Below, one piece after another: positions 20,563-59,469 of a DNA stretch of 64,000 nt. The stretch lies in IMG/VR virus record IMGVR_UViG_3300040801_002079, positions 62,001-126,000 of that record; one strand, 5' to 3'. A program made the position numbers and the translations under genes. The first letter of the stretch is position 1. Every line of letters begins with the position of its first letter. The notes beneath the pieces were generated by a model that ran no database searches, was not told the origin of the DNA, and saw nothing but the letters and a program-made list of their open reading frames with translations.

Positions 20563-21177
20563 CTACTTGGAGTAAATTTTATATCCCTCTGTGCTCTTGT
20601 CGATGTTATATCCCTTGTTCTCAAGCTTGGGAATGCGTTGAAATCCACGGGATGTCTTGGAACCGTGCATGGCAAAGTCCATAATGTTATCATCACTCAG
20701 GTCACCACCACCGAATTCCTTTTCAAAGAACTCAGTGACAGTAGGGTCTTTGCGTTCCAATGCCTTCTTGAATGATGTGAAGATGTCTTTGTTGCGAGTG
20801 ACATGTATATTACGTTTTGCTAATCCATGCATGTTCTTAAGGATTTCATCTTCAACATTGTCCGGGACAACATTCAAAACAAAGCAGGAGAGTCCCACAT
20901 CAAACGTGTCATCAGGGAGTTTATTGGATACGCCTTCCCATCCATCGCAGTCAGTTCCATGGTAGGGATCATAGGTGTATACCTTAACCCCTCTATCACG
21001 CAACCATTTAGCGTTACGCCCCGTTTTACCAGCACCATAGTCCAACACCTTCATTCCATCCGTTATGTCGTTCTGGAGGAACAGGTGGCGTACAGCAGGG
21101 GCTACACCGGCTGAGATGGATGTACCACCCTCTTCAAGTGGTTCACCTTGGTATACTTTTAGGTCTTTGAGTTTCAT
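20563..21177 (-). CDS. Class I SAM-dependent methyltransferase (late, N-terminally tagged)
   Basis: VLDYGAGKTGRNA, YDPY, FD.....FVLNVV; TATAAATA-N5-ATG. Confidence 0.82.
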   Translation of the reverse strand: MKLKDLKVYQGEPLEEGGTSISAGVAPAVRHLFLQNDITDGMKVLDYGAGKTGRNAKWLRDRGVKVYTYDPYHGTDCDGWEGVSNKLPDDTFDVGLSCFVLNVVPDNVEDEILKNMHGLAKRNIHVTRNKDIFTSFKKALERKDPTVTEFFEKEFGGGDLSDDNIMDFAMHGSKTSRGFQRIPKLENKGYNIDKSTEGYKIYSK

Positions 21178-21384
21178 GCATGTATTTATAAATCCGTGAT
21201 CGACACAGTATAGCACAAATTAACTTTGTGTCAAGCTTGATAAATAAAATTACATGTGATAGGATATCAGAATGCGAAATCATAATTTATTACGAAAGGC
21301 TATAACATTGAGAAGTACAGAAACGATTATAAACAAAGAAGGCTTCATTGAGTATGAAGATTGATCCCATCAATCCTTAGTTAC

Positions 21385-21476
21385 GTTGCAGTGGCAGAGT
21401 CTGGTTATGCGCTGGATTGCAAATCCAGTTAGTGCTCGAAAGGGCCACGCGGGTTCAAATCCCGCCTGCAACTCCA
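21385..21476 (+). tRNA. tRNA-Cys(GCA) with an atypical long variable arm
   Basis: GTTGCAG/CTGCAAC acceptor, U73, CCA; CTGGA-TTGCAAA-TCCAG anticodon arm; about 20 nt variable region. Confidence 0.88.
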
Positions 21477-21520
21477 ACCTTCCAAACATACATTATGTTT
21501 CAATTACTATAAATAGTAAT

Positions 21521-21937
21521 ATGAAATATTGTCCAGTTTGTGAAACAACCAAAGAATTATCTGAATTTAATAGAAATAAAGCAAAGAAGAACGGGGTTGC
21601 TTCTACGTGTCGTGAGTGTATGAAAATTTATAGGTCACGATATTACAAGAAAAACAAAGAACTTGTAATGGAGAAGGCATCTAAGCGTCGAATTGAACTT
21701 AAAGAATGGCTTGAAGATTATAAATCTGATAAAAAATGCATTAAATGTGGAATGGATCATCCAGCAACACTAGACTTCCATCATCGTGATGAATCAGAAA
21801 AAGAATTTAGTATTGCTACTGGCATTGGTCAATTGGGTAAAGGAAAACAATCGTTATTGGATGAAATAAATAAGTGTGATATACTATGTTCAAATTGCCA
21901 TAGAATATTACATTACGAAGAACGTAAGCGGGAGTAG
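21521..21937 (+). CDS. Free-standing HNH homing endonuclease
   Basis: CPVC..CREC N-terminal Zn motif; CIKCG....LDFHH...K...EINKCDILCSNCHR.LH; late promoter 21508-21515. Confidence 0.88.
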   Translation: MKYCPVCETTKELSEFNRNKAKKNGVASTCRECMKIYRSRYYKKNKELVMEKASKRRIELKEWLEDYKSDKKCIKCGMDHPATLDFHHRDESEKEFSIATGIGQLGKGKQSLLDEINKCDILCSNCHRILHYEERKRE

Positions 21938-22003: not shown

Positions 22004-22006
22004 AAC

Positions 22007-25000: not shown

Positions 25001-25084
25001 TTTCTCAATTGCTTCTTCAAGAACGTGATCCATGATGTTCTCCGTGATTTGATGGACACATAATACCAAAAGAGGGAATGCTTG

Positions 25085-28544: not shown

Positions 28545-29759
28545 CTAGGGCAATACGTGAGTCCAGCTTTCCCAATCACGAATCCTGCGAATGGTACGGT
28601 CACTGACACCGAACATCTTGGCAAGTGACGTAAGACTGTCGTAAGCACCCTGTTTCAGAATCTGTCGAATCTGCTTCACGGTCTTATCGTTCAGCTTGGC
28701 ACTTGCAGACGCTACAGGCGCATCATCCTCATCGTCCGTTGCTTCTGTATCATCCCAATCAAAGACTTCATCATCGGAATAGTCATCTGCTTCTACTTCG
28801 AACGCTCCCTCGTTGACACGGGCACCCGCAACAACTTCTTCGTTTAGAGCATCCCAAATGTACTGATCAGGATCACCAGCGCGGAAGTCTCGCGCACCCT
28901 GTCGAGTAACAAACGCATCGACAAGGACATCAGTGTCAGTGTCACGAACTTCCCAACGGAAACCGGACGTATCGAAATCAATTTCATCCTTGACTTCCGG
29001 TGACGGTTCCGAGTACTCGTTGGTGAACCACGGCTTGATGATATCATCCCAAGAGATTGCATCAACAATTTCGTACTTGCAAGCACGACCTTTGGCATTG
29101 TTGTAATCAGTAGGAATGGAAGTCACATCACGGGGATTGACTTTGACCACGACCACCTGATCATGGTTCTCCGTACCATACTGACCGAGATACCCTTCCG
29201 AGCAGAAGTGCAGACCCGTAGAGCAGGTACGTCCACGATTGAAATCACAGTCTGCACGGTTCATTTCCAGAACCTGTCCAACGCTGTTGTCCATCGTGCG
29301 AGTGTAGATATCCTTGAAGTCAGGAGTGACCATCTTGTATGCAAGGAAGTGACCATCAGCAGTGATGGGAAGATTGCAGGCTTCGATGAAACCGTAAATC
29401 TCTTCCACGATGGTTCCGCTCTCATTCGGATTGCTCATCACATTGTCGAGGAACAGAGTCAACGGAGTGATATCAAATCCTTCCTTGAACATTTCCACGA
29501 TACGGGTAGCAAGCAGAGCAGGAATCTTCTCGTACTTCTCTGAGCGGAGGATACCGTTCAGCAGGTACAGACCACCGTTACTTTCGGAAATCAGGCGACC
29601 CTTGATATCCAGAATCGTCGGGACCAGATCAAAGTTCTTGTCACGAATCGCGGCACGAACTTCATTGTATCGGTCATCACCTTTGTTGACTGTCATCGGC
29701 TTACCATCAATCACAAAGACGATGGAAGTCGGAGTCACGGTGTAAGCTAAATTACTCAT
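28545..29759 (-). CDS. rIIB: rIIB lysis-inhibition protein with acidic linker and C-terminal HTH
   Basis: LPITADGHFLAYK, MDNSVG...M.R..CD.....CSTGLH, KVNPRDVTSIPTDYNNAKGRACKY. Confidence 0.95.
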   Translation of the reverse strand: MSNLAYTVTPTSIVFVIDGKPMTVNKGDDRYNEVRAAIRDKNFDLVPTILDIKGRLISESNGGLYLLNGILRSEKYEKIPALLATRIVEMFKEGFDITPLTLFLDNVMSNPNESGTIVEEIYGFIEACNLPITADGHFLAYKMVTPDFKDIYTRTMDNSVGQVLEMNRADCDFNRGRTCSTGLHFCSEGYLGQYGTENHDQVVVVKVNPRDVTSIPTDYNNAKGRACKYEIVDAISWDDIIKPWFTNEYSEPSPEVKDEIDFDTSGFRWEVRDTDTDVLVDAFVTRQGARDFRAGDPDQYIWDALNEEVVAGARVNEGAFEVEADDYSDDEVFDWDDTEATDDEDDAPVASASAKLNDKTVKQIRQILKQGAYDSLTSLAKMFGVSDRTIRRIRDWESWTHVLP

Positions 29760-32158
29760 TTGTTTTCTCCTGTGTTGATACTAACGTTAGCGTAGTCAAT
29801 CACCGCTTTCTGGAACTCTTCTTTCTCACCTGAATACCACGGGGAGGAAACGTGATCCAGAAGTTTTAATTGACTGTTTACATTATCCACCATTTCGGTG
29901 TATTTGTCAACCGTTTCGGCAACAAAATCCGAGGGTTCTGGCAGATCAGAGTCACCCATGAAGCGCACCAATGCTTGAATTGCTTCGAACTTGGCTGACG
30001 GGTAACGCTTGTTAAAAAGTTTCTTAAAGCGAATCAGGGTGCGAACAGGATGGTTCTCATCCAAACGATCAAACTCTTCTTCGCTTACGGATTCGATTCG
30101 GGAAACAACTTTGGATTCACGAATCTTTTCACGAACCGCAATCAGGTTATTACGATTAACCAAATCAACCGGAACTTCCACATTCTCTCGCAGTTCCTTG
30201 ATCAAGTCCTGAATAGGCTTGAAACCGTATGTCAGGGCTTTATCGTACCGTGCGCGAGACAGGGCAAGGATAACCGTATTATCGTGGTCAAAATCCATCT
30301 CACTGTTCAGGTAGTGCTGGATGAATTGCAGATCGTCATATTCCAGACCTTCGATTTCGCACCTGTGCGTTTGGATAATGTACGCATCAGTATCAATCTT
30401 GGTCAGCGGAGTGTAGACATCCGTCCAGTACTTAGTAGAACCAAAACTGTGCTTCTCATGCTTGAACATCCGAGCAACAGGCGTGGTATTCGAACCGTAT
30501 GCAACCGTGCTGATGTTCTTGGGCAGTTCGATACTGGACAGGTAAACCAGTGTCAGATTATCATCGACAACCTCTTCCAGCATTTCCAGTGCATCATCAT
30601 CGTAGGTATCCAGAGTCAGCACTTCGCTACCTTGCAGACCATTTTCTTCTAAGTAGAACTTGATCTTTTTCAGGAACGAGTAACTATTGTCCCTGATGAA
30701 AACAATCCTGCTCTCAGTAGGGTTAATGAAAACATCACTGTTCAGGCGCGAGGTTTTACCATTGTGCTCATTGTACTCTGACCAGCGCAGTTTGTACTGG
30801 CGGTAGTGACCGTGGTTGGCAAGCTTCGTTTCCACGTTACCCTGATCATCTTCAATGTCAATCCATTTCAGGGAAGTGTAGTCACCCCAACCCGTGAGAG
30901 GCAGAGAGATAGCATTCTTGCTGTAACGGAAATTCGGATTTCCGACCATCTTGCGAACACGCTTCGATGACAGGTCAACAATGCTGAAATTGCGATTCAG
31001 GAAAACGGCTTTCTCATAGTCCGTCATAGAATCATCGTCAATGGAATCCAGCACGTAACCCGTGTACTCATCCATCGCTTCACGTTCACGTTCCTGAATC
31101 TTGGCAATCGTATCATCGTCGTACTGCAAATCCTCACGGGAGGCAGTAACCATGACTTCACCAATGTCAAACCGTGCAACCAGATTCTGCTGGAACAGGT
31201 TATTGCTCAGGTAACGAATGTTGTACGCATTATTACCAACGCAAGCGAATCCCTTGTTCCACGAATCACTGTCCAAATCCTCTTCGAACAGGATGAAGTG
31301 TTCACCCTTGTAAGCAACCTTCGGGAACTCCACTTCATCGTTCAACACGACAGGCAGGGGATCAAAGTACTTCAACTGATCCACAATCGCTTTCTTGAAC
31401 GTATGGTAGTCATCGGGAGCAACGGCAATCTTCACTTCCAGACCATTGTCCTCATCAGTATCAACCGTCATCATCAGATTGATTTGCGGCATACCGTGTT
31501 CGTTGGTCAGAATGTTGTAGACCCGCTTGATTCCATTGTACCGATTAGTAACAATGAAGTTATCGGTGTAGGCAAGCGGAGTCTTTGAACCGAGTCCAAA
31601 GGCACCCGTGAAGTCATTCGACTGTTCCTTCGTAGAACGAAAGTAGGTGCTGTAGAGAACCAACGTATCGTCAAACTCGACTGCAACGTCCTTACCGGAG
31701 AAGTCACCGGGAACACGCAGAACCGTTTGCTTGTTGGTATTGTCATACAGGATGGCACCAATGTTAACCGTCTCAGTTTCACCGAGAACGACCATGTTGA
31801 TACCTTCGATTTCCTTGCGGATATCACCGTCAATGAAGATGGTGGATTCACCTTCGTGCTCATTGACAATGTTAGCATTGTGCTTGAAGTAGCGCAGACC
31901 CGTACCGAAATCCTTCACTTCAAAATGAGGATCAAAGGCAGACGGGCAGGATACTTCGAACGGTACTTCCGGCTTACCAGCGGCGATATGTGCATCGTAA
32001 GCATTGGAGCACAGTTCACGAACAATCGTGGATTCGATTTCGGAGTACATTCCACTGGACAGAACGTTAAAGGCTTTACCGTTCATATCAATGCTGAAAT
32101 CGACATTGATGCTCATTCCAGCAGACTGTACAGACTTGGCTTGTGTATTGAGTTTCAT
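29756..32158 (-). CDS. rIIA: rIIA protein (GHKL ATPase N-domain)
   Basis: KAFNVLSSGMY...VRELCSNAYDAH, DFGTGL, STK..SN.FTGAFGLGSKTP.AYTD; ATGA-coupled to rIIB. Confidence 0.95.
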   Translation of the reverse strand: MKLNTQAKSVQSAGMSINVDFSIDMNGKAFNVLSSGMYSEIESTIVRELCSNAYDAHIAAGKPEVPFEVSCPSAFDPHFEVKDFGTGLRYFKHNANIVNEHEGESTIFIDGDIRKEIEGINMVVLGETETVNIGAILYDNTNKQTVLRVPGDFSGKDVAVEFDDTLVLYSTYFRSTKEQSNDFTGAFGLGSKTPLAYTDNFIVTNRYNGIKRVYNILTNEHGMPQINLMMTVDTDEDNGLEVKIAVAPDDYHTFKKAIVDQLKYFDPLPVVLNDEVEFPKVAYKGEHFILFEEDLDSDSWNKGFACVGNNAYNIRYLSNNLFQQNLVARFDIGEVMVTASREDLQYDDDTIAKIQEREREAMDEYTGYVLDSIDDDSMTDYEKAVFLNRNFSIVDLSSKRVRKMVGNPNFRYSKNAISLPLTGWGDYTSLKWIDIEDDQGNVETKLANHGHYRQYKLRWSEYNEHNGKTSRLNSDVFINPTESRIVFIRDNSYSFLKKIKFYLEENGLQGSEVLTLDTYDDDALEMLEEVVDDNLTLVYLSSIELPKNISTVAYGSNTTPVARMFKHEKHSFGSTKYWTDVYTPLTKIDTDAYIIQTHRCEIEGLEYDDLQFIQHYLNSEMDFDHDNTVILALSRARYDKALTYGFKPIQDLIKELRENVEVPVDLVNRNNLIAVREKIRESKVVSRIESVSEEEFDRLDENHPVRTLIRFKKLFNKRYPSAKFEAIQALVRFMGDSDLPEPSDFVAETVDKYTEMVDNVNSQLKLLDHVSSPWYSGEKEEFQKAVIDYANVSINTGENK

Positions 32159-35317: not shown

Positions 35318-35527
35318 TTAACTGCCCCGATTGACAGTATGTGAAATATCCAATAGCTGATCAATGAAGTTCTTTACGACATCTTTATCCAATCCGGATT
35401 TTTTAATGTCCATCGCAAGCTGTTTGCATTTCCCAGCAACAACTGATCCCAAATCCTCACCTTCGGTTATAACCTCATCATTAGATTCAACCAACAGATC
35501 ATTCCATTTGTCTTCCCAGTTTTTCAT
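35318..35527 (-). CDS. Small late protein with LVES/ITEG putative protease-cleavage motifs
   Basis: GATAAATA at about 35550 and a GGAG RBS upstream. Confidence 0.6.
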   Translation of the reverse strand: MKNWEDKWNDLLVESNDEVITEGEDLGSVVAGKCKQLAMDIKKSGLDKDVVKNFIDQLLDISHTVNRGS

Positions 35528-35559
35528 AACATTCTCCAGTGTTTACATTATTTATCAAA

Positions 35560-38059: not shown

Positions 38060-39097
38060 ATGGTAGAAGAAGCCTACGTCTATCTGTGGAGAGATTCTGT
38101 AAACAAGAAATTCTATCTTGGGTATCATAAAGGATCACCTGATGATAACTATGCCCATTCATCATCGGTTATGGAATCCTTTAAAATGAATTCTGTCCCT
38201 AATGGGTATAAACGTAGAATACTTGCGTTTGGATCAAGGGAAGAGATGTTAGCACTTGAGGAAACTCTGCTTAAGAATAGAAAGGAACGAGGTCGGTGGC
38301 ATAAGTATCATAATATGAAGACATGCTCATTTCCTTATCTCTGGGATGATCCTGAGTATCGTGAGAAGATGAAAGCGTTATGGGATGATCCTGAGTTTTA
38401 TAAGATGAGGTCTGAAGAAACATCCGCTAGACTTAAAGAAATGTGGAAGGACCCTGAGTATCAGAAAATGCAGTCGGAACTGATGTCAGCTAGAAATAAA
38501 GAGTGGTGGGATGACCCTGAGTATCGTGAGAAGATGGCAAAAATGATGTCGATTCGAAGCAAGGAGTGGTGGAATGACCCTGAGTATCGTGAGAAGATAT
38601 GTGCCGCATTGAAAGCGGCATGGGATGATCCTGAGTATCGTGAGAAAATGGCTGAGATTATGTCAGTTCGTGTTAAAGAACTATGGAAAGACCCTGAATA
38701 TCGTGAGAAGATGGCTGAGATTATGTCAGTTCGAAGCAAGGAGTGGTGGAATGACCCTGAGTACAGACAGATGAAATCTGAAAGTATGTCGATCCTACAC
38801 AAAGAACTATGGAAAGACCCTGAATATCAGAAGAAAATGTCTAAGAAGCGAAAGGCTATGTGGAAAAACCCCGAGTATCTAAAAAAACAAGCTGAAAATA
38901 TGGCAGTTCGAAGTAAAGAACTATGGAAAGACCCTGAATATCGTGAGAATATTTCTAAAAAAATGAAAAAAAAATGGGAAGACCCTGAGTATCGTAAAAA
39001 GATGCGGGCTATTTGTACGGTGTGCGGGCACGAATCTCAAAAATCAGTAATAACACGATACCATAACGATAACTGTAAGTTTAAGAACAAACAATAA
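38060..39097 (+). CDS. GIY-YIG (Seg-like) endonuclease with 12 tandem W.DPEY repeats
   Basis: YVYLW......KFYLGYH.G...D.Y..SS N-terminal domain; repeat array; C-terminal CTVCG...RYHNDNCK. Confidence 0.85.
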   Translation: MVEEAYVYLWRDSVNKKFYLGYHKGSPDDNYAHSSSVMESFKMNSVPNGYKRRILAFGSREEMLALEETLLKNRKERGRWHKYHNMKTCSFPYLWDDPEYREKMKALWDDPEFYKMRSEETSARLKEMWKDPEYQKMQSELMSARNKEWWDDPEYREKMAKMMSIRSKEWWNDPEYREKICAALKAAWDDPEYREKMAEIMSVRVKELWKDPEYREKMAEIMSVRSKEWWNDPEYRQMKSESMSILHKELWKDPEYQKKMSKKRKAMWKNPEYLKKQAENMAVRSKELWKDPEYRENISKKMKKKWEDPEYRKKMRAICTVCGHESQKSVITRYHNDNCKFKNKQ

Positions 39098-39298
39098 ATA
39101 CATGTATGAACGATTGTGTAACATATGATGATTTGTTTCGAATATTGCAGTGGGTTGTGGTAATTATCACAATCATGTTTATAGCATATACCGGTCAATT
39201 AAAAAAACTTACTTCCAACTCATGGGTAAAACCCATTATCATTGGTGTCATCATCATTGTTCTTTCCGAGGTCATCATACGAGCAGTGGGGGCATGAT

Positions 39299-39727
39299 AT
39301 GAAACTCAAACATCTTTTTGAATCACACGAAGCTCTTGAATTTGTCACACCCCATGAAGAACGGGATGACATGTATGAGTTAATGGATCAGGCCGAGAAG
39401 CTTGTGCATGAGCGGGGGCTTCGTATGCTTCGTAACGATGAAATCAGTGAGGTAGTGGTTCACGGTGATAAAGTAGTGGGGGTTCTGTACAATGGACACT
39501 ATGACAATGAATTAACTTCTTCTATAGCTGTTGATCCATCTTATGAAGGCCGAGGGCTGGCTAAAGAATTATTTTCCCGTATTCCTTTTGATCAATATGA
39601 GCCACTTGTGAATACTCATGTCTGTGAAGTTCTTCCACCTTATACCATGGAAAAATTTCTGGTCCGTAATGGATATGAACACACTGAAACGGATCGGGAT
39701 ATCAAAATCTATAAAAAGGAAATTTAA
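39299..39727 (+). CDS. GNAT acetyltransferase with N-terminal MKLKHLFE tag
   Basis: IAVDPSYEGRGLAKEL acetyl-CoA motif; FL..NGY. Confidence 0.82.
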   Translation: MKLKHLFESHEALEFVTPHEERDDMYELMDQAEKLVHERGLRMLRNDEISEVVVHGDKVVGVLYNGHYDNELTSSIAVDPSYEGRGLAKELFSRIPFDQYEPLVNTHVCEVLPPYTMEKFLVRNGYEHTETDRDIKIYKKEI

Positions 39728-39729: not shown

Positions 39730-40095
39730 TTGAAACTCAAAGAACTGATAACCGAAGGATTCAAACAAAAAAACGGAATGTTTCTTGGCTACCGTGTGGT
39801 CAATCTTACGGATGATGGACGCATACAATCCCAAGCGGATAAAAGAGTTCACCTTCCATTGAAATTAAATGCAGTGCATCATGTTCCAAACGGGGGTTAC
39901 TGGGTGACCAACGATCCTCAATATGCACTCGACTATTACAGCAACGGTAGCTGGGAAGAGGATGAACCTCGACAGGCATTACTCACTTATGGATTTACCA
40001 AGGACAATGTTCAATCCGGTGACATGGATGATATTGAACCTGAGTTGAGTATCAATGGTGCGGTTCTGTTGAATGCAAAGGAACTACCGCTGTAA
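39730..40095 (+). CDS. Hypothetical late protein with MKLKELITE tag (possible ADP-ribosyltransferase-like fold)
   Basis: TTG start; YR...G.WVT.D..YA..Y...EPE pattern is only weakly ART-like. Confidence 0.5.
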   Translation: MKLKELITEGFKQKNGMFLGYRVVNLTDDGRIQSQADKRVHLPLKLNAVHHVPNGGYWVTNDPQYALDYYSNGSWEEDEPRQALLTYGFTKDNVQSGDMDDIEPELSINGAVLLNAKELPL

Positions 40096-44799: not shown

Positions 44800-46824
44800 A
44801 TGCGTTTTAACGTAAAATTAGAGGAGTAAATTATGCACGAAGATTTGGGTTATAGTTCCACAAAATTACATTTTCCCTTTTGGGTGAAATTTATCATAGC
44901 GTTTATCGGTCTTGCCTTGTTTTACATTGCTGGAATTTATTTAATAAAGGGTTTTATATTTTTAGTAATGACCTATCCGACACCTTCACTGATTGTAATA
45001 ATGGGTTCACTTATTTCACTTCTTGCTGGTTTGATAGCATCCTTATGGCACTATAGTTAGGAGATTAAAATGGAAATTATTGGATTTGATGCCTTCGCCT
45101 TTATTTTTTTCGGCATTGTGTTGGCCTTCGGTTGGTACATGTTGTTTCATAATGCACCTTTTACCATTCAATTTATCACGGAGTGACTTATGAAAGAACT
45201 TAGTGCTTCAAACTCAATTATTGCAGATTTCTTATTGAATGGGACGTTTAGTGTTACAAGGGGACGGACAGACATTTGTGAGTTAATGGTTGATTTCATT
45301 GCCCAGTTTGTGTTTACTTCATTTATGTTTTTATCCCTCATTGTTATCACATGGACATCCCTGTTTTCTTCTGTAATGGTGCTTGATTTTTTTGTTGGGC
45401 CTCAGTATTTTACGGATTTCTATTTGTATGTGAGGGAATTTAATACGCCATCTGCACTTTTTTGGATTACATCATTGATGGGGGGTCTGATGACTACACC
45501 CATTGTAATTATTGGACTGCTTATTACATTTATCAAGAAGCACCGATCTGATAGTGAATCTTTTATCGGAAATTGGTGGAAATCAAAGCGTCAGAGGATG
45601 TGCTTCGATATTAAAGTTGTGCCATAAATATTAGAGAGACTAGAATTATGAGAGAACCAACTCATTATCTATGTGATAATCACCCCTTGCATGATTTCTA
45701 TGCCAAAGAGGATCATCCGCGTAAGGAAGTAGATGGTGAAATGGTAGTACAGTGCCCTTATTGTATGGCTGTTACCATTCGATATCTCAACGAGAAAATG
45801 GTATTGTTTAAAAAATACATTAATCATGTGGGTGAGTGTGAAGGTATAGATTTTACGGGAAATTCATTAACCTGTTCAGATAAATTTACGGATGAAGAAA
45901 AGAAAGATTTACGTATTATAGCTAAAGCCGCTTGGGAGGAAAGTCAATGAAACCTATCGTTATTATATTCTTAATTGTACTAGCAGCATTTATATTCATG
46001 GTCAAGAAGGATGTTAAAACATATCACATCACTTGTCAGATCGATGGACTTTCTTTGTATGATGGAATTGGAACACAACTTGAGTACCCTGACAGTGGGG
46101 AAAATCAGCTAATCTTTGTTGATGAAAATGGAGATGAGGTTGCCATTTCAAACAAGGCAACCTGTCAAATTAAATAGTTATTTTTCTATTCACCTAATGC
46201 GTCAATGGCGTTTTTGCAGTCAATGCTCAAACGCCCCTTTTCCCAGCATTCTTCGAACTCTGCTTGCGCATAACGAATCTTTTCTTTCAGTTCTCTTAAT
46301 TCCTTGCGCTCTACCTGCAAACGGTTAGCTGCCCATTCGGGGGATTTCTTGCACAACTTCAGTAGAGTCATAAATTCTTCGTGTCGTGGATCAAAACCAC
46401 CTTCTATAATTACCATGTTTAATTTCCTTTATTTAAAAAGATTTCATGATCAGTATCATACCACATCATTTGCTTCATATCAACCATTGTGTTATAATTC
46501 ACCCCGTTAATTTTAGCAGGAGAAGAAAATGTTTAAGGCCAGAAAATGTGTCGTAAAAAATGTTAACGCAATTTGCAAACCTAATAATAGCCGCAGGATG
46601 GATTGGCGTAAATATGCCTTTTTGTATATTGTAAGTAAGGCTGAATTGGAAAACTGTGATTATAGCAATGCGTGTGGTATGCATGATAATGATGGTATCC
46701 ATCTATGGTGGGACAATCGTGATGCACTTGTCAGGTTTGCATGGAAGTATAAAGATGAGCCTGACCTCAAGTGGAAAATTTATAAAGAGTTTGTTACAGA
46801 ATAAATATAAAAAAGGAGTTTAAA

Positions 46825-47247
46825 ATGAAACTTGATCAAATTTTAAATGAAAGATGGTATGAAGATGAATGGGAAGATGAAGATGGTGATTATGGATGGT
46901 TGCCCATTTCATCTAGAGAAAATGGATTCTGGTTCGAAAATTTTGACAGTGTTGATAAACATAATAGTTGGTTTGATGGCATCGGAAAAGATTTATATGA
47001 ACTAGGCAGTGAAAAGTTCAATAAGAAATTTGACGATCTTCGTTGGGAAGAATACTACTTCCCCCCAGATTGGCAAGAGGTTGTTTCTAGAATGCCCGAT
47101 CCGAGGAAATTCGGAATTGATCCCACACGACCCGATAATACAGATATTAATGCTGGTAAACAATTTTTGGATGCATTTACTGACTGGTTTGAATCGGAAG
47201 AGTTAAACGATAACATTAAGCTTGAGGGCGATTTAAGGAGTTTATAA
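46825..47247 (+). CDS. Acidic late protein with MKLDQILNE tag
   Basis: AATAAATA at about 46800 and AGGAG RBS. Confidence 0.7.
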   Translation: MKLDQILNERWYEDEWEDEDGDYGWLPISSRENGFWFENFDSVDKHNSWFDGIGKDLYELGSEKFNKKFDDLRWEEYYFPPDWQEVVSRMPDPRKFGIDPTRPDNTDINAGKQFLDAFTDWFESEELNDNIKLEGDLRSL

Positions 47248-47582
47248 TGAAACTTGATCAAGTATTAAATGAATGGAATGACTGGGATGACTTGAGTGGT
47301 CATCATCGTGCGGGAGCGTCAGAAGCAGATCGTGAAGAAATAATTAATGACATTTATCAGTATCTCAATCAGCCCCATATGAAACGTCACATGGAAAAAC
47401 ATTGTCCCCGACTATTAGCATCCAATAGTTTAGATGCAATTGCGGATCAAGTCGCATTTACTCCCATTGATGGAAAGAATGTGATTGATTGGATTGATGG
47501 AGATGAATATTACACAGATGATGACTTTGAAGATCAAGTAGAAGATGCACTTCAAAAACTAGAAGAACCCCTCTGGCACTAA
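47247..47582 (+). CDS. Acidic late protein with MKLDQVLNE tag
   Basis: RBS and first 9 codons nearly identical to 46825; remainder unrelated. Confidence 0.7.
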   Translation: MKLDQVLNEWNDWDDLSGHHRAGASEADREEIINDIYQYLNQPHMKRHMEKHCPRLLASNSLDAIADQVAFTPIDGKNVIDWIDGDEYYTDDDFEDQVEDALQKLEEPLWH

Positions 47583-49602: not shown

Positions 49603-51892
49603 AGATGGTTACATTGTTTTTAGCACAAACGGTGAGTTCTTTGACACCGAATTTGATTGTGTATGTGATGAAGTTGAAGACCTTCGTGAAGATGGTGAGA
49701 TTGTAAGTATATGGGTTGGTGAACTTGATGAAGTTAATCACCGGGATTACATTAATGCTCACTATATTGTCGAACAAATGGCTGATGCGGCATATGATGA
49801 TTTAGATGACTTTACAGAAGGTTATCTGGATGATGTAACCATGAAGCAACTTGACGAATTGGAAGAAGTTATCTCCAATTGGTTCGATGAGAATGTTTCA
49901 AAACCATCGTTTTTCAGGGTTCGAAACATGAGAGAGGTTAGTTTTAAAGTGGGTCAACGGGATAAGGCATGGAAGGCAATACATGACGGATAAAATAAGA
50001 CCACTATCTGAATATCTTGATGAAAGTTGGGAAGACCCGCATAAGCGTAAGTATTTGAAAGAGGCGGTGTTTGACTATAATCGCAGACTTCGTGAAGAAA
50101 ATGAGGCTCTTATTGCTTTTATAGATGAATATATGGGAGTTCCCGATGGGACCAGACTGTGGCCCATGTTTGAACATGCTAATAGAGTCGTTAAGCGATT
50201 TGAAAAAATGGACCAAAGAATATCCCAACTGGAAGAGGTTATAGAAATTCTACGCAACTGTGACCCCGTTACTATACAAATGCCCGTTGGTGGTAACGTT
50301 CCATTTGTACCATATAGTAAAATTAGAAGATTACTGGAGAAAGTTTAATGACTAAAGAAAAGGGCAATAACAACCCCTTCAAGTCTGCAATAGAAAAAGC
50401 TAAAAAGGATTTAGAAGGATTCGATGAAGCCATGGAGATTGTTAAAGAGTTGAGAAACCCAACAAAGAATAGGCCGTTTATTCACAAAGAGCGGGTACAG
50501 AAAGGACCCTATGAGGTTGTGGAAGAAGAAACCACGTATGATGAAATTGATGAAATTTTTGGTACGGATGGTAACAATCTTGTAAGTTCAATGATGCAAA
50601 GAATTCGTGATTACGAAGATGTAATTAAAACTTTAACCGATGAAAATAAAAGATTAAAGAATTCTAATAAAATTTCGGTCATTTCTGAGGACATTTCCAG
50701 TCTAAGAGATTGGATTTTAGGGGAATCCAAAAGGCTAAATGATGAAATTAGGAATATATCTAAAGTTGTCAAGGATGTTAAAAAGTGCAAGGTTTATGTA
50801 CTAGATTCAAGAGGTAATATGATTGAAGAGAGTGATGATACACCGTTATCTGCAATTAGATATATACAAAGAGATGATGTATTAAGAGTTTTTAAAAACA
50901 GGAGGCTGGTTGATAAAAATGGCTAATAAAACTTTAGAAGTTTGGTACAGATATGATGATGACTATGATGGAAATGTGCTCTGCACAAAGTATGAAGTAT
51001 TAAAGCATACCCCGAAAGGTGTTTGGTTAAAGTTTGGAAACAATGATAAATTTGTACTAAAAGGTGCTAGGAAGCGTTTTGCATGTCCAGATAAGGATTC
51101 AGCATTAGAGTCTTTTATAGCTAGGAAATATTCACAGCGCAAAATTGTTAGAAGACAGGTTGATAGGGTGGAAAAGGCAATACTTTCTGCACAAACAATT
51201 CAGGCTGGATTAAAACCACATAGATTTACACAAGTATATACCATAGGGAGCTTTACGCATGACTATCCATAACAATAATGAATTAGACTGGGCTAGATTA
51301 TTAAAAGAACAAGAAGAAGAAACCAAACGATATAAAGCTTTATATGAAACACGAGAAAAGCAATTGGAATGTGCTCATAAGCGAATTCGTGACATAAAGC
51401 GATGTCAGAGATATAGTATTGATAAAAACGGCAATCCAGTTGAATGGAGATTCGGAAAGTGGATCATTCATGAAGAAATGGTAAAAGCTGCGGCCCTTCC
51501 CCATGAAGATGACGAGAGGTAAAAACAATGTTTCCTGATACATATTGTGCATTCTGTCATAATAGAACAGCAACCGGATGTGAACATTGCAACCCCTCTG
51601 TTCATGGACGCATTGACTTTTTTCCCGATCCCCCCGATTTGGAAAGAGAAATTGAAGAGATTAAAAAGCGGTTAGATAAGCTGGAGAATAAAGATGTTTA
51701 GTTGGGTGTTATTACTGGCAAGTCTTATATTATTAGCTGGTGTAATGTTAATGGCTGGGTATGACTTTAAAAAGCAAACCGTGCCCGTACTTATAGGGGC
51801 GACACTTCTTTGGGTATTGATTACATTGGCAAATTTTATATCTCCAACCACATAGCTTTCTATAAATACGGATAATAATCCGAGGATTTGCT

Positions 51893-53212
51893 ATGAAAAT
51901 TAATGAAGTCATGGGCGGTGAAAAACGAGCCGCGATAAAAAAGGGTACGAAAAGACCCATGGGACTTTCCCATAAAATCAATAAACAGTCTAAGAAACTC
52001 CAAAATAAAGCTGCTAGACGCAAAAGCAAGCGTGAATTGGAATTGTCTGAGTCTATAAATGTAATTCTATTTGAAAAACTAAAATTACTCCATGATAAGA
52101 AAAATGGAGTTCTCGCTGTGGCTTCCGACGAAACTGACCCCAAAAAGGCAAGCCGAGAAACGTATCGCAATAAAGATGCTCTTAAGTCTGCTGGTTTTAA
52201 ATGGTCTGGTGGCAACTGGACTATTAGTGATTCTGAGTTTGAAAAAGCCAAGTCTACATTAACCACAATTAACAAAACAGAATACCTGATTAATAAACTG
52301 GAAGATGTTCAGGAATTTATCGGTGATGCTACCAGTGACCCTAAGAAGGGGAGATTAACCGATATGATTCAGGGTTATATTGATGACTTGGCAAGTGCTA
52401 CAGATGAAGCCGCTGCTGCCGAAGAAATACGTAAGTATTTGGATTTCTTCTCTAATTTTTATCAGTACAGTTTCTTCAATAAGATTTTAATCTATATTCA
52501 GAACCCGGATGCAACTCAGGTTGCTAGCTATAAAAACTGGAGGAAAAAGCATCGTCAGGTTAAGAAGGGCGCTAAAGGTATGCAGATTCTCGTACCTATA
52601 TTCCCAAAGGGACGCAATCCAAAATATGATGATGTGGATGAGGATGATAAAGCTCAGCCAGTAAGATTCATTGTTGGCAGCGTGTTTGATATTAAGGACA
52701 CGGAAGCTATAGATGAAAGAGGTGAGGCTCCTGAAGAACCAGAGTGGTGGGGTGACAATACTCCAAGTGAAACGGCTAAAGACCTATTCAATTTGGTTGT
52801 CAAGGCAGCAGAAGCTGAAGGCATTGATATAACCTCTGATGATGCGAAAGGGGGAGAGAAGGGCTACAGTTCTGGTGGACATATTAACATCACATCGAAT
52901 GTAGAAGGTGTGGGTGAAGTTTCCACGATGGTTCATGAGTTTGCACACGAATTAATGCACTGGAAGGATCGCTCCAAGTTTTATGTTGGTGATGAGGCCG
53001 CTGGAAACAGGAAACTTAAAGAACTACAAGCCGAGAGTGTGTCATATGTTGTCCTGAAGCATTATAAGCTTCCAGTTGAGCATCACACTAAATATCTTGC
53101 TTTGTGGAGAGCAACCGGTGAAAAAATCAAGAACAACATTGAAACAATTTCAAAAGTTGCTCATTACATTATTAAAAAGATTGACGCTCAAGCAGAAAAG
53201 AAATCTAAATAA
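51893..53212 (+). CDS. ArdC-like ssDNA-binding domain plus zincin metallopeptidase (anti-restriction/polyvalent type)
   Basis: YSFFNKILIYIQNPDATQVASY..W....RQVKKGAKG..IL.P, VFDI..TE, HEFAHELMH, ELQAESVSY; TATAAATA at 51861. Confidence 0.88.
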   Translation: MKINEVMGGEKRAAIKKGTKRPMGLSHKINKQSKKLQNKAARRKSKRELELSESINVILFEKLKLLHDKKNGVLAVASDETDPKKASRETYRNKDALKSAGFKWSGGNWTISDSEFEKAKSTLTTINKTEYLINKLEDVQEFIGDATSDPKKGRLTDMIQGYIDDLASATDEAAAAEEIRKYLDFFSNFYQYSFFNKILIYIQNPDATQVASYKNWRKKHRQVKKGAKGMQILVPIFPKGRNPKYDDVDEDDKAQPVRFIVGSVFDIKDTEAIDERGEAPEEPEWWGDNTPSETAKDLFNLVVKAAEAEGIDITSDDAKGGEKGYSSGGHINITSNVEGVGEVSTMVHEFAHELMHWKDRSKFYVGDEAAGNRKLKELQAESVSYVVLKHYKLPVEHHTKYLALWRATGEKIKNNIETISKVAHYIIKKIDAQAEKKSK

Positions 53213-55715: not shown

Positions 55716-57443
55716 TGGAAATTAGTAAAGATATTTTAAATAGTGTGCTTGAAAATGGTGAATATGAAGCAATAATAGAAAAAAATCTTCATAGTGGACC
55801 CCATTATAGTATGGTATTCGAAATGGATGATAAACTGTATAAGGCTTATTATATAGAGGGGTCACATGGACCCCGTTGGTTATCACCCAAACCTTCAAGC
55901 GAAACGGCTGAATGCACTGAGGTTGTACGAAAGGAAGAAACTCGTATCGTAATTGGATACGTTGATGTACACGAGGAACCCTCTACTACACCCATGTCAT
56001 TGGATTATTATCTATAGGTATTAGCCGTTAGTTCTCTAGCTACCGATTGGTGGCATGGATAAGTATGAAAAGAAATGGAGGATAGTCATGAGCGAAAACT
56101 ATCAGAAAACGATACGTGAGCTTAATGCAACCATCGAAGAATTACAGTACAGATTGTCCCATTGTGTTGAGTTATTAAAGACTGCCAAGTGTCCATCAGG
56201 GTGTAATGGTAAATGCACATGGTGTTATGAGAGAGAAATAGAGGTCAGAGCACATTAATGAAAAGTGATTGCAAATTAAGCACAGATTTTTATCTGGGAC
56301 TTGTCAGTTTAGAAAAATATAAAGATGCTAAATCCACGGCAATGGCTAGATTTGGTATAAAAAAGAGTAAACGAGTTCATTATAATGATGTTATGGACGA
56401 AGTAATCAAGATATTAATAGAATATAATGCTGTAACATTCGAAGATGAATTCACCCTTGAATAAAAATAATGAGATAAATATGACCGTGTACTCACAAAT
56501 GATTAAAGAATTGGATACGATTATCAATTCAAGTGAGCGTACAGAACTGGAAAAGGACTTGGCTGAGACCTTGAAGCTGAGTATTAATTATATTAAGGAT
56601 ATGAAAAATGATTATAAAGTGTGACCTTTGTGGTAAAAAGACAACCCAGATAAATTCCCCCGCCAGTATGTTGAAAGATGTTGAAAACCTTGATGGCATG
56701 TGTAACGATTGCATGGAGCGAATGAATGTCGCTTTAAAGGAAGCCAGAGTTGTGGCCCATAAAGTCATCAGTGATGCGATGGTCGCAGAAGCTGAAAAAA
56801 TAAGGAATGAGCAGTGAAAACCAGCATTCTTTATCTACTGTTAAGTGTTTTCTTCATTTTAACATGGTTGGGATTTTATAATTCCTACGCTATGAAAGAA
56901 GAAATTAACGGCCTGAATGCCTCACTTGGAAACCTGTTTGCAGATTATTGTAAAGACCATGGCGGTGTTACTATTGTAAAAGATGTGCAGATTTACTTAC
57001 CTGATATTAAAAATAAGGAAGACCTTACGATGGCCTCATGCCGAGATGGAGACTATTACGGGATTCTTCTCATTAATAAGCACACACAAAAAGTTATCTA
57101 TTACATAACCGAGGATTAATATGCAAGGATTTATAACAGGAACCATACTTGGCGTAGCCGGGGGCATCATAGGATCATATCTATTTTTTAAATTCGTAAT
57201 TGCTCCCAAACTTCTCAACATTCAAATAGCTTATAATAATTTAAGAGTAGCTTCTACCGCACTTTTTAAAGACAGTTCAGTTTTACTGGCGTTTCAAAAT
57301 GTATTTGCACAGAGATTAATTGACGTTGAGGAAAAGCTGGACATAGAAAGCTTAACACCCGAAGATTACAAAGCCATTCAATATGATGTTATCGCATCTA
57401 TTGAATCTTATGCAAAAGAACCGGACTTTTAATAAATAATATT

Positions 57444-57674
57444 ATGAAACTACACGAAGTATGCAAAGATGCATTGGATAAACCAACACCGACTCTTGAT
57501 GATTTGGTAAAAAAGTATGACCTTTCAAAAGAGGAACTTCAATCTCAGCTTGACATGGGCATTGAAGTAGAATTTGAGCACACATCGGATAAAAAGGTAG
57601 CTAAGGAGATTGCATTAGATCATCTAGCCGAAGACCCAAAATATTACGATAAACTCAAAAAAGTTGAAGAATAG
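57444..57674 (+). CDS. DUF5661-like late protein
   Basis: QL.MGIEVE.EHT.D...A.EIALDHL.EDP.YY.KL; AATAAATA-N5-ATG. Confidence 0.75.
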   Translation: MKLHEVCKDALDKPTPTLDDLVKKYDLSKEELQSQLDMGIEVEFEHTSDKKVAKEIALDHLAEDPKYYDKLKKVEE

Positions 57675-59004
57675 TTTGCATCTCACCTCCTAATATTGTA
57701 TAATTAGTCCAAATAATGTTGATACTGTCTATAGTTCTAGCATTACTAAGCTGTTCAGTAACAACGTATGTACTTTTTAAAGATCGCTCATCCTTTGTGA
57801 GCAGAGAATCAAGTACAACCAATAAAGTCCTTATAATTTTAAGTGTAACGCTCATAATTATAACATTATTGGTCTACCTTTTGGAGAAATTTGGATGATG
57901 TTTTTACAAATCGGAATTTATGTATTGATTGCCATAGTAACCTCCCTTCTGATTGCCGCATATGATGGTGGACAGCGATGGGGAGCCGGAACGTGTTTAT
58001 TTTTGGGAGCAACATGGCCCATATCCCTTTCCATTATGCTGTGGATTGTAATTCGTAGAAAAATAGGGGGAAGATAATGATTTATAATGTTCCAAAAAAT
58101 ATGAAAGTAGAGGAAACACACAAGGTTTGTGAACACCACAAGAAGCATCCCGATGATGTATCTTATCCCGGATGCACATGCTACCACTCTTGGACGGCAA
58201 AGTTTGACATTCCACTTCCAACATATTATGGTGTATCATTATGCATGTAAAAGAATTTAACATTATAACCGACTACACCAAAACTGGCACCATAGAGTGT
58301 GAGGACGGCACAATTGCCGTGGCTAATAATCTTTCATGCGGAGTATGTGGTGACGATACCGAATTTGAGCCTCTCATATCGGATGGAAACAACTGGCACT
58401 GTGTTAAATGTTGGACTGATGCTGGTCACGAGCCTCCAACTGAAGGCACCAAGATGCGATTGAATGAAGCTAAAATGACCACACGAATGAATTGCCTTAT
58501 CAGGAATATGTGATGAGATACGCAGTTATAGCAACCATCATAACCATAGCATTAACTGTTATGCTTGCCGTAACGTTTTTAAGCTTTATGACCAGCTATA
58601 ACAATGATAGTGCTTCAATACGCGATATCATAGGGAATGGTATGCTATTCCTTTCCTTTTTGATATCATCTTGCATCATTGTTCAAATATTCTTTGTGTG
58701 GGTTTTCTCCAATCAAGTTGAGAAACTGAAGAGTATTTTGGATACCAAAAATAAAGAAATTAGTGCCTTGCGCGGTGAAGTAAAGCGAGTGAAGGAAGAC
58801 GTAGACTTGCTGCTATGAAAAATCTAATGAATTTCATCGATGATTATATTCTAACATCGTGGCATTTCTTTGTAGCAGTCTCGCTGGGTACAATTTTCGG
58901 CTTAGAAAACGTAATACCCATATATTCTCTTATCTGGCTTATGTTATTCGGGGCAGCATCTTTTCTATTTTTATTCAAGTATCGTAAAATGTATAAATAC
59001 TCAC

Positions 59005-59469
59005 ATGAAACTCAAAGACATCAAAAAGCCAGAAAAGCGTAACCCCGTAGCTAAAAATATGGGCATTAATAAAGCTTCTACTCATAAAGATAAGAAGAAA
59101 GCCCAAAGAACTCCTCGTAAGAACCAAAAGCATAAAGGTAAAATGTTTGAATCCTTTATAGTTCTTTGTGAGGAAGCTAAGGTTTGGACAAAAGATGAAA
59201 TCAAAGAAAAGCTTAAAACAGATGACCGATGGCTTATTCGTGCACTATTAGCAATCTACAACAAGCAAACAGAGGATGAGCAGGCAAATGACATGACTGC
59301 ACATTATAATAATGTTGGATTTAACGGTCTAGATGCTGAATGGCTTTCAAAGATGGCTAGGTTTTACAAAGATCGTGGGTTCCTATCGCCTAAGCAATTA
59401 ATGCACGTTCGTAAAAAAATGCTAAAATATTCAGGCCAACTGGCTAAGATCGCAAATAAAAAGATTTGA
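59005..59469 (+). CDS. Late protein with a basic N-terminal peptide fused to a conserved QT.DEQ...N.VGF..D...LS.KQ domain
   Basis: TATAAATA-N5-ATG; NPVAKN...HKDKKK; MFESF linker. Confidence 0.7.
   Translation: MKLKDIKKPEKRNPVAKNMGINKASTHKDKKKAQRTPRKNQKHKGKMFESFIVLCEEAKVWTKDEIKEKLKTDDRWLIRALLAIYNKQTEDEQANDMTAHYNNVGFNGLDAEWLSKMARFYKDRGFLSPKQLMHVRKKMLKYSGQLAKIANKKI

What the first reader, a model, noticed from the sequence alone, without database searches (positions are those of the whole stretch)
20563..59469. Unrelated late proteins share a capsid-targeting-like N-terminal tag: candidate virion-delivered enzyme set
Seen: genes behind late promoters begin MKLKDL..PLEE (methyltransferase, 21177-), MKLKHLFE (GNAT, 39299), MKLKELITE (39730), MKLDQILNE (46825), MKLDQVLNE (47247), MKINEV (ArdC-zincin, 51893), MKLHEV (57444), MKLKDI...MFES (59005), and more loosely MKNW..LLVES..ITE (35527-). 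The protein bodies are unrelated. Known: T4 internal proteins carry an ~10 aa capsid targeting sequence (MKTxxEFIxE type) that prohead protease gp21 removes after (L/I)xE. Inference: this phage packs a methyltransferase, an acetyltransferase, an ArdC-type anti-restriction protein and acidic proteins into its head and injects them with the DNA for anti-defence or host takeover.
Basis: partly seen in the sequence, partly recalled or inferred. Interest (0 to 1): 0.88.

Follow-up and report, generated by a model that had tools for sequence, protein, structure and literature searches.

The report
Head-targeting tag on phage enzymes
An uncultured 317-kb T4-like phage puts the short N-terminal tag of its own head-core proteins onto unrelated enzymes (a methyltransferase, an acetyltransferase, an ArdC-type protein and others), so it probably packs them into the capsid and injects them with its DNA; this is a larger, variant form of phage T4's known internal-protein system.

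Summary
The window comes from a 316.8-kb uncultured T4-like jumbo phage. I took three tags (MKLNDILLE, MKLNDILVE, MKLSDILTE) from small acidic proteins flanking that phage's own prohead protease, outside the window.

Supporting evidence:
- Seven of the eight carry an (L/I)xE protease-type site ending at residues 5-16, against 14% of other genes.
- Five have a late-promoter motif directly upstream. The other three sit downstream in the same gene runs.
- Orthologues keep the tag while the codons vary, so selection acts on the protein.
- The methyltransferase and ArdC-like families carry lineage-specific T4-type leaders in many other phages, and none in some.

Corrections:
- PLEE in the methyltransferase belongs to the conserved body.
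- The ArdC protein probably has a 53-residue leader.
- 57444 and 59005 are weak candidates.
- 39730 starts with TTG.

Verdict: the capsid-targeting reading is well supported computationally. It is a new variant of a known kind. Packaging, cleavage and injection are untested.

The parts
20563..21177 (-). Class I SAM methyltransferase, 204 aa. The leader MKLKDLK is followed directly by the conserved body motif YxGxPLE-E-GGTSI. LEE at residues 14-16 is the only (L/I)xE site in the protein.
   Evidence: Pfam Methyltransf_23/11. AF2 gives pLDDT 91, with residues 1-20 at 61-66 and unstructured. Foldseek matches SAM methyltransferases. 120 homologues have variable CTS-like leaders. Vibrio phage orthologues start MKKFxxFLTE.
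21183..21190 (-). Late-promoter motif TATAAATA, 5 nt before the methyltransferase ATG (predicted leaderless late mRNA).
   Evidence: The T4 motif lies at -13 to -6 (PMC1524935).
21207..21234 (-). Sigma-70-like promoter TTGACA-16-TATACT with an extended TG, upstream of the methyltransferase. It predicts early as well as late expression.
   Evidence: 11 of 12 matches.
39093..39100 (+). Late-promoter motif AATAAATA, 5 nt before 39106. It heads the gene run 39106 / 39299 / 39730.
39299..39727 (+). GNAT acetyltransferase, 142 aa. Tag MKLKHLFE, with the predicted cut after E8.
   Evidence: Pfam Acetyltransf_7/1. Four orthologues start MKLDDILIE-S, MKLNEILTE-S, MKLSEILRE-S and MKLFEI.
39730..40095 (+). 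Protein of unknown function, 121 aa, with a TTG start. Tag MKLKELITE, with the predicted cut after E9. This is the best-scoring tag in the window.
   Evidence: Score 25. The 71%-identical orthologue P0002 starts MKLNDILTE-GF with ATG. Its neighbours carry the tag on unrelated bodies.
46800..46807 (+). Late-promoter motif AATAAATA, 17 nt before 46825 and followed by an AGGAG ribosome-binding site.
46825..47247 (+). Acidic protein of 140 aa (36 D+E). Tag MKLDQILNE.
   Evidence: Score 22. It shares only ~20 N-terminal residues with the next gene.
47247..47582 (+). Acidic protein of 111 aa (27 D+E). Tag MKLDQVLNE.
   Evidence: Score 21.
51861..51868 (+). Late-promoter motif TATAAATA, 24 nt before the ArdC-like gene.
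51893..53212 (+). ArdC-like protein, 439 aa, with an ArdC N-terminal domain and an HExxH zincin motif. The leader of about 53 residues starts MKINEVM, is rich in K and R, and ends at LSE53 just before the family-conserved body.
   Evidence: Pfam ArdcN and phrog_7245. HEFAHELMH read. Family homologues align from query residue ~55, and stand-alone ones start MKLTQLLEE, MLKISTILAE or MKTFLEFLSD.
57431..57674 (+). AATAAATA-N5-ATG followed by a DUF5661 protein of 76 aa starting MKLHEVCKD. Weak candidate: residues from about 6 onward are family-conserved, and position 9 is D.
   Evidence: score 14.
58992..59469 (+). TATAAATA-N5-ATG followed by a 154-aa protein. It has a 12-residue extension MKLKDIKKPEKR, then a DUF7230 module, then a phrog_21015 body. 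There is no (L/I)xE site before residue 56, so this is an uncertain candidate.
   Evidence: The Yersinia phage JC221 DUF7230 homologue starts MNNPVAK with no extension.
35318..35556 (-). 69-aa protein starting MKNWEDKWNDLLVE, behind GATAAATA 21 nt upstream. It does not match the main tag. It resembles the start of nt-1 gp23 (MNLTEKWKELLE), so it may belong to a second class.

Best explanation
The shared N-terminus is this phage lineage's version of the T4 capsid-targeting sequence. It is a 7-9-residue propeptide with consensus M-K-L-x-(D/E/Q/N)-(I/L/V)-(L/I)-x-E.

Proposed mechanism:
1. The tagged genes are transcribed late by a gp55-type sigma factor from NATAAATA promoters. Many of these promoters sit exactly 5 nt before the ATG, which predicts leaderless mRNAs.
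2. The tag binds the nascent protein to the scaffolding core of the prohead. The core proteins encoded beside the protease carry the same tag.
3. After the shell closes, the T4-type prohead protease (Peptidase_S77) cuts after the Glu of (L/I)xE.
4. The trimmed protein stays in the head with the DNA and enters the next cell with it.

Candidate cargo in the window:
- Strong: 39730, 46825, 47247, the GNAT (39299) and the methyltransferase (21177).
- Probable: the ArdC-zincin protein (51893), with a longer 53-residue leader.
- Doubtful: 57444 and 59005.

Shown: the tag, the protease sites, the promoters, identity of the tag with those in the head operon, and conservation of the tag in orthologues. 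Inferred: binding to the core, cleavage, packaging, injection and an anti-defence or takeover role.
For: 1. The contig's head module (L133) holds Portal_T4 and Peptidase_S77. The protease is 36% identical to Vibrio phage nt-1 gp21.
2. Proteins flanking the protease start MKLNDILLE, MKLNDILVE and MKLSDILTE. The protease itself starts with ..LLIE and ..IITE sites.
3. The permutation null was never reached in 2000 trials.
4. An (L/I)xE site ends at residues 5-16 in 7 of 8 tagged genes and 21 of 151 others (p = 1.9e-5).
5. Late-promoter motifs are associated with the tag (p = 5e-5). A gp55-like sigma factor is present.
6. Tags sit on unrelated bodies: 46825 against 47247, and L133:829 against L133:10001.
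7. Orthologues keep the tag: P0002 starts MKLNDILTE, and the GNAT orthologues keep it too.
8. In the methyltransferase family the body is conserved while the leader ranges from 0 to 45 residues. Many leaders are CTS-like, such as MKLKDILTE, MKSFSEFITE and MKTFNQYLEE.
9. In nt-1, MKKFDTFLTE (methyltransferase), MLGNFDSFLSE and MKTFNEFLAE sit on three unrelated proteins.
10. Stand-alone ArdC-like homologues carry such leaders.
11. Codons differ between tags (AAA/AAG; CTT/CTC/TTA/TTG), so selection acts on the amino acids.
12. The methyltransferase leader is predicted to be unstructured.
13. Reviews state that the T4 CTS is a 10-19-residue N-terminal propeptide able to carry foreign proteins into the head (PMC9026906, PMC5694885).
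Against: - There is no virion proteome. The phage is uncultured.
- The proteins beside the protease are called core proteins only from their position and acidity. They have no PHROG or Pfam hit.
- 59005 has no early (L/I)xE site. In 57444 and 51893 the only early site ends at residue 5, which is too short for a T4-like propeptide.
- Most of the N-terminus of 57444 is conserved across its family.
- (L/I)xE sites are not significantly depleted in the bodies: 10 observed against about 16 expected.
- In the cultured relative XacN1, the enzymes reported in virions (chitinase, lipase) lack the tag (PMC5852040). Packaging without the tag therefore also occurs.
- Only 120 of 317 kb of the genome was surveyed.
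Confidence: 0.78

Rival explanations
1. The tag does direct proteins to the prohead core, but some or all tagged proteins are assembly components. They would be core or scaffold subunits, later degraded or retained, rather than effectors delivered to the next host.
For: 46825 and 47247 are small and very acidic, like the head-operon proteins c95 and c122. In T4, gp67, gp68 and gp22 are cut into fragments (PMC5694885). No function could be assigned to 39730, 46825 or 47247.
Against: A methyltransferase, a GNAT and an ArdC-zincin have no plausible scaffold role. The methyltransferase and 39730 have no internal (L/I)xE site, so they would survive the protease. The T4 Alt enzyme sets a precedent for packaged enzymes (PMC9026906).
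Confidence: 0.12
2. The shared start is an RNA-level signal. It would be a translation-initiation enhancer for late mRNAs that lack a Shine-Dalgarno sequence or a leader, and the peptide would be incidental.
For: Seven tagged genes have NATAAATA exactly 5 nt before the ATG and no SD. Five tags share ATGAAACTCAAA (13 or 14 of the 14-mer ATGAAACTCAAAGA) including the rare CTC codon. The start is A-rich.
Against: Twelve of the 19 N5-ATG leaderless genes lack the tag. The head-operon tags and 46825/47247 have ordinary SD sites or sit inside operons. Codons vary among tags while the residues are conserved out to position 9, including the Glu. Orthologues keep the pattern with different nucleotides.
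Confidence: 0.05
3. The propeptide is a protease-dependent switch, or another kind of localisation signal, that works without packaging. For example, the prohead protease could activate the enzymes in the cytoplasm late in infection.
For: The (L/I)xE sites alone say only that the protease could cut. A preprint reports phage prohead proteases acting on non-virion substrates (PMC12991175, abstract only).
Against: The same tag sits on proteins encoded between the portal and the protease. In T4, the N-terminal part of the CTS is what targets proteins to the core, and cleavage is separable from targeting (PMC9026906).
Confidence: 0.04
4. Chance plus the general bias of bacterial and phage N-termini towards M-K-(L/I).
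For: Lys is the commonest second residue (33 of 174 gene calls), and MKL or MKI starts 11 genes. An unbiased count of similar N-terminal pairs is only modestly above the control positions.
Against: The permutation null was never reached in 2000 trials. The exact 14-mer recurs. The tag recurs in orthologues and in the head operon.
Confidence: 0.01

Closest known systems
Phage T4 internal proteins IPI, IPII and IPIII with their capsid-targeting sequence (Mullaney and Black 1996; reviews PMC9026906, PMC3012670)
   Same: A short N-terminal propeptide is shared by otherwise unrelated proteins and ends in (L/I)xE for the gp21 prohead protease. The genes lie in variable accessory regions, sometimes as neighbours with the same tag. 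The cargo is thought to counter host defences on entry.
   Different: The tag here has 7-9 residues and the consensus MKLx(D/E)(I/L)LxE, rather than the 10-residue MKTxxEFIxE type quoted in the finding. The cargo includes recognisable enzymes of 120-440 aa. At least 10 non-operon genes carry the tag in 120 kb. Many are driven by a promoter placed for leaderless mRNA. One head-operon protein (L133:17780-17956) still has a T4-type start, MKRTFIEFLTE.
Phage T4 Alt, a packaged ADP-ribosyltransferase
   Same: An enzyme carried in the head, trimmed by gp21 and injected to act before phage genes are expressed (PMC9026906).
   Different: The enzyme classes here are different (methyltransferase, GNAT, ArdC-zincin). 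No Alt homologue was found in the surveyed DNA.
Vibrio schizoT4 phages (nt-1, KVP40 group): ORF331, ORF332 and ORF403
   Same: ORF332 is the orthologue of the window's methyltransferase (35% identity). It starts MKKFDTFLTE, has a single (L/I)xE site at residue 10, and lies just after gp24 and gp55.
   Different: Those phages use the T4-type 10-residue tag, and only three such genes were found in 247 kb. I found no paper in the library describing them as head proteins.
Phage P1 Dar system, and the ejection proteins of giant phages phiKZ and SPN3US
   Same: These are anti-restriction or other proteins packed in the head. In the giant phages their propeptides are removed by a T4-related protease after Glu (PMC5694885, PMC9024508).
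   Different: The giant-phage propeptides are mostly longer than 100 residues, and the cleavage motif is AxE or SxE. P1 targeting depends on DarA and Hdf rather than on a short shared tag.

Membership tests
T4-type CTS-tagged internal head proteins | The phage encodes a gp21-type prohead protease (Peptidase_S77) in a T4-like head module. | tested here: met
   L133:15384-16007 matches PF03420 at E = 2.9e-22 and is 36% identical to nt-1 gp21. Portal_T4 lies 2.5 kb away.
T4-type CTS-tagged internal head proteins | A short N-terminal peptide is shared by proteins whose bodies are unrelated. | tested here: met
T4-type CTS-tagged internal head proteins | The peptide ends in the protease motif (L/I)xE, about 8-20 residues from the start. 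| tested here: met
   Met for 39299 (E8), 39730, 46825 and 47247 (E9), and 21177 (E16). Not met for 59005. For 51893 and 57444 the only early site is at E5, although 51893 has LSE53 at the leader/body border.
T4-type CTS-tagged internal head proteins | The same peptide is found on the phage's own prohead core proteins. | tested here: inconclusive
   The tag is on three small acidic proteins flanking the protease. Their identity as gp67/gp68/gp22 analogues rests only on position and composition, with no family hit.
T4-type CTS-tagged internal head proteins | Sequence match to the T4 CTS itself. | tested here: inconclusive
   The architecture is the same: M-K, a hydrophobic pair, then x-E. The tag is one residue shorter and has different residues. 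T4-type versions occur on orthologues in other phages and on one head-operon protein here.
T4-type CTS-tagged internal head proteins | Late expression. | tested here: met
   Sequence level only: NATAAATA motifs are enriched before tagged genes, and a gp55-like sigma factor is present. There are no transcript data.
T4-type CTS-tagged internal head proteins | The protein is present in the virion in cleaved form and is injected. | not testable with these tools
   The phage is uncultured, and no proteome of a close relative covers these genes.
ArdC anti-restriction proteins | An ArdC N-terminal domain (Pfam ArdcN) plus a C-terminal HExxH metalloprotease. | tested here: met
   PF08401 at E = 5.5e-10 and phrog_7245 at E = 1.2e-17. 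HEFAHELMH was read. Anti-restriction activity was not tested.
GNAT acetyltransferases | A match to GNAT profiles above the curated cut-off. | tested here: met
   Acetyltransf_7 scores 27.2 against a cut-off of 27, and Acetyltransf_1 scores 20.8 against 20.7, so the match is marginal. Orthologues are annotated as GNAT.
Class I SAM-dependent methyltransferases | A Rossmann-like methyltransferase fold with a glycine-rich SAM-binding motif. | tested here: met
   Methyltransf_11 scores 21.7 against 21.2. D46 and G48/G50 of the DYGAGK motif are invariant, and Y47, A49 and K51 nearly so. The AF2 model has pLDDT 91. Foldseek gives probability 1.0 for SAM methyltransferases, but TM-scores are only about 0.5, so the substrate is unknown.

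The most novel reading that the evidence does not exclude
This jumbo T4-like lineage has turned the capsid-targeting peptide into a portable cassette: a late promoter, five bases, a leaderless ATG and the tag. The cassette has been placed in front of a dozen or more unrelated genes, so the virion would deliver a whole enzyme kit (methyltransferase, acetyltransferase, ArdC-zincin and others). The methyltransferase and ArdC-like families are head-targeted across many T4-like phages, each with the tag of its own lineage. Tag recognition could therefore serve as a general way to find injected counter-defence proteins in phage genomes.
Probability: 0.5. Interest if true: 0.75.

Novelty: new variant of a known kind. 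Interest (0 to 1): 0.62.

Why it matters
Proteins injected with phage DNA act before any phage gene is expressed, so they are the first line against restriction and other immediate defences. Only a handful are known, mainly in T4 and P1.

If the tag works as proposed, three things follow:
- A simple sequence rule would predict an injected proteome of ten or more proteins in one phage.
- That proteome would include enzyme classes not previously linked to phage heads.
- The same logic could be applied, lineage by lineage, to thousands of T4-like genomes. The widely distributed methyltransferase family with lineage-specific leaders would be a conserved head-borne enzyme that has gone unnoticed.

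The tag could also serve as a packaging handle for engineering relatives of this phage. The idea itself is not new: T4 reviews already suggest that the CTS lets T4-like phages recruit varied proteins.

Tried and rejected
- **Megablast of 32 kb against cultured phages:** no match.
- **Literature:** no paper on a KVP40-group CTS or virion methyltransferase was found. The KVP40 genome paper is not held.
- **XacN1 virion proteome:** the chitinase and lipase reported in virions lack the tag, so this gave no support either way.
- **Collection-wide search for ATAAATA-N(5-30)-ATGAAACTCAAA:** It did return a third site on the same contig, which led to the head module.
- **Walking the contig:** three 10-kb extensions (contig 131-141, 219-229 and 250-259 kb) held no further tags.
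- **Unbiased pair count of similar N-termini:** only weakly above control positions.
- **Depletion of (L/I)xE inside cargo bodies:** not significant.
- **Covariation in the methyltransferase family:** loss of the leader site goes with PLE-E in the body (p = 1.6e-4). It reflects essentially one clade, so it counts as one event.
- **Function searches:** PDB sequence searches for the methyltransferase profile and for L133:10001 gave nothing usable. A single-sequence AF2 model of L133:10001 failed (pLDDT 37), so I make no kinase claim for it. The PHROG kinase hit of L133:829 is weak (E = 5.5e-4). NCBIfam added nothing firm.
- **T4 control:** I did not write out or fetch T4's own internal-protein sequences. 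I used the pattern quoted in the finding and the reviews instead.

Full report
**What the window is.** It encodes rIIA (29756-32158, minus strand), rIIB, RNA ligase 1, a Thg1-like enzyme, homing endonucleases and three tRNAs. No cultured phage is close at the DNA level, and the best RnlA identity is 44%. The window is bases 62001-126000 of a 316.8-kb IMG/VR contig. By portal protein, its nearest cultured relatives are the jumbo Xanthomonas and Stenotrophomonas phages Xoo-sp13, XacN1, CM1 and RAS14, at about 49% identity.

**The observation.** The bodies are a class I methyltransferase, a GNAT, an ArdC-N plus HExxH protein, DUF5661, and DUF7230 fused to a phrog_21015 body. Three proteins have no family hit. 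The neighbours 46825 and 47247 share only about 20 N-terminal residues.

**An independent yardstick.** A DNA-pattern search returned a third copy of 'ATAAATA-N5-ATGAAACTCAAA' elsewhere on the contig. Looking up that gene gave contig 229-250 kb, which is the head module.
- It holds Portal_T4, four small proteins, a 371-aa acidic protein, and Peptidase_S77 (36% identical to nt-1 gp21), followed by 141-aa and 435-aa proteins.
- The proteins on either side of the protease start MKLNDILLE, MKLNDILVE and MKLSDILTE. The 435-aa protein starts MKLSQITPQQLNE.
- Another small protein starts MKRTFIEFLTE, which is the T4 type. The protease itself starts with LLIE and IITE sites.
- Three plus-strand genes nearby, each with NATAAATA 5 nt before the ATG, start MKLKDLQE, MKLNNILQE and MKLKDLLTE. 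Two of them were compared and share only MKLKDL.

**Statistics.**
- Using only the three protease-flanking tags, I scored the first nine residues of 159 window genes. The next best score was 8.
- Seven genes score at least 14. Column permutation gives a mean of 1.1, and none of 2000 permutations reached 7.
- A six-frame scan of all 120 kb in hand adds only antisense or deep-internal false positives.
- An (L/I)xE site ends at residues 5-16 in 7 of 8 tagged genes, against 21 of 151 others (p = 1.9e-5). The rate in the others equals the body density of the motif.
- TATAAATA occurs 11 times against 3.5 expected. A late-promoter motif lies within 30 nt of 5 of 8 tagged genes and 7 of 151 others (p = 5e-5). 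The remaining three tagged genes are second or third in those gene runs.
- Among roughly 90 minus-strand genes around rII, only the methyltransferase carries the tag. It has both a late motif and a near-consensus sigma-70 promoter.

**Orthologues.**
- *39730:* a 71%-identical protein from another metagenome starts MKLNDILTE-GF. The genes before it start MKLTELLRE and MRLDDVLGE on unrelated bodies.
- *GNAT:* four orthologues at 37-45% identity start MKLDDILIE-S, MKLNEILTE-S, MKLSEILRE-S and MKLFEI. M1, K2 and L3 are invariant.
- *Methyltransferase:* among cultured phages it occurs only in Vibrio schizoT4 phages, where it starts MKKFxxFL(T/S)E and lies just after gp24 and gp55. In nt-1 the only other such starts are MLGNFDSFLSE on the neighbouring ORF331 and MKTFNEFLAE on the unrelated ORF403.
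- *Methyltransferase family at large:* among 120 metagenomic homologues the body begins at YxGxPLExGGTSI, while the leader ranges from none (MANHYTGK...) to 45 residues. Many leaders look like a CTS, such as MKLKDILTE, MRLSDLLTE, MKSFSEFITE and MKTFNQYLEE.
In this phage's clade the leader is only MKLxx(I/L)K, and the body motif reads PLE-E, which creates the sole (L/I)xE site.
- *Structure:* the AF2 model is confident except for residues 1-20, which are unstructured. Foldseek says only 'SAM methyltransferase'.
- *ArdC-like family:* homologues align from query residue ~55. Many are the C-terminal part of 600-1200-aa proteins. Stand-alone members start MKLTQLLEE, MLKISTILAE, MKTFLEFLSD and similar. 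Here a basic 53-residue leader starts MKINEVM and ends at LSE53, just before the body.

**Protein-level or RNA-level signal.**
- Five tags share ATGAAACTCAAA (13 or 14 of the 14-mer ATGAAACTCAAAGA), including the rare CTC codon. This points to recent spread by recombination.
- Across all tags, however, the codons vary (AAA/AAG; CTT/CTC/TTA/TTG) while the residues hold out to the Glu.
- Where an ATG-led ORF follows ATAAATA within 0-15 nt, the spacing is exactly five bases in 19 of 23 cases. In T4 the motif lies at -13 to -6 (PMC1524935), so transcription should start at the A of ATG.
- Twelve of those 19 genes lack the tag, and the head-operon tags are not leaderless.
- The tag is therefore not a translation signal, although promoter, start codon and tag form a compact unit.

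**Grading of the window genes.**

| Grade | Genes |
|---|---|
| Strong | 39730, 46825, 47247, GNAT 39299, methyltransferase 21177 |
| Probable | ArdC 51893 |
| Weak | 57444 (N-terminus mostly family-conserved; Asp at position 9) and 59005 (a 12-residue extension over the JC221 homologue, but no early site) |
| Different motif | 35527 |

Two more tagged genes lie just beyond the window: L001:18374 (MKLNEIASS) and L001:19549 (MKLKQLYE). In all, 17 tagged genes were found in 120 kb.

**Comparison and limits.** The system works like the T4 CTS and internal-protein system and like Alt (PMC9026906, PMC3012670, PMC5694885). It differs in the tag sequence, the breadth of cargo and the promoter design. 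Nothing here shows that the proteins are physically packaged, cleaved or injected. The proteins beside the protease are called 'core' proteins by position only. 197 kb of the genome remains unread.

Noticed in passing
window 21183-21177(-), 22819-22806(-), 39093-39106(+), 57431-57444(+), 58992-59005(+), 21508-21521(+), 60658-60671(+), 10421-10408(-), 7581-7568(-), 2466-2453(-); also L133, L137 and L139: Where an ATG-led ORF of at least 40 aa follows ATAAATA within 0-15 nt, the spacing is exactly 5 nt in 19 of 23 cases across 120 kb. With the T4 late motif at -13 to -6, this predicts that many late mRNAs of this phage are leaderless. They include a lipoprotein, a membrane protein, homing endonucleases and a 1540-aa protein.
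   Followed up: partly
window 21207-21234(-): A near-consensus sigma-70 promoter (TTGACA-16-TATACT with TG) lies just upstream of the late motif of the methyltransferase. The gene may therefore be expressed both early and late.
   Followed up: partly
window 59005-59469(+); L006:1495-1632: A DUF7230 module is fused in frame to a phrog_21015 body that stands alone in Xanthomonas jumbo phages. In Yersinia phage JC221 the DUF7230 homologue is an unannotated 45-aa ORF downstream of rIIB and ndd.
   Followed up: partly
window 32747-32989(-) and 48985-49200(+): Two otherwise different small proteins both start MMSTKR.
   Followed up: no
L133:282-530(-); L139:17112-17795, 17829-18203, 18200-18466(+): Several small proteins near the head module start with twin-arginine-like peptides (MKRRxxLKG followed by a hydrophobic stretch). 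This is a second recurring N-terminal signal in this phage.
   Followed up: no
window 35318-35527(-); L140:1731-1943: MKNWEDKWNDLLVE resembles the start of nt-1 gp23 (MNLTEKWKELLE) and of a late gene in a related contig (MKFEEKWKRIVE). This may be a second propeptide class.
   Followed up: no
L007:1925-3193; L009:493-: DUF5661, the family of 57444, also occurs inside a DUF2213 head-morphogenesis protein of Vibrio phage VPs20. It also occurs at the N-terminus of a 610-aa protein just after the small terminase in cyanophage S-SRM01.
   Followed up: no
L001:18374-18868(+) (contig 129378-129872, just right of the window): A tagged 164-aa protein resembles the C-terminal part of DNA-phosphorothioation-associated methyltransferases (TIGR04096, E = 7e-8, below the cut-off). 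It is followed by a Methyltransf_21 gene and another tagged gene.
   Followed up: no
window 1-36400 versus 36470-64000: Gene orientation switches near 36.4 kb, and G+C drops from about 44% to about 37%. Codon use differs between the two halves: CTG is 34% of Leu codons in the first half and 13% in the second.
   Followed up: no
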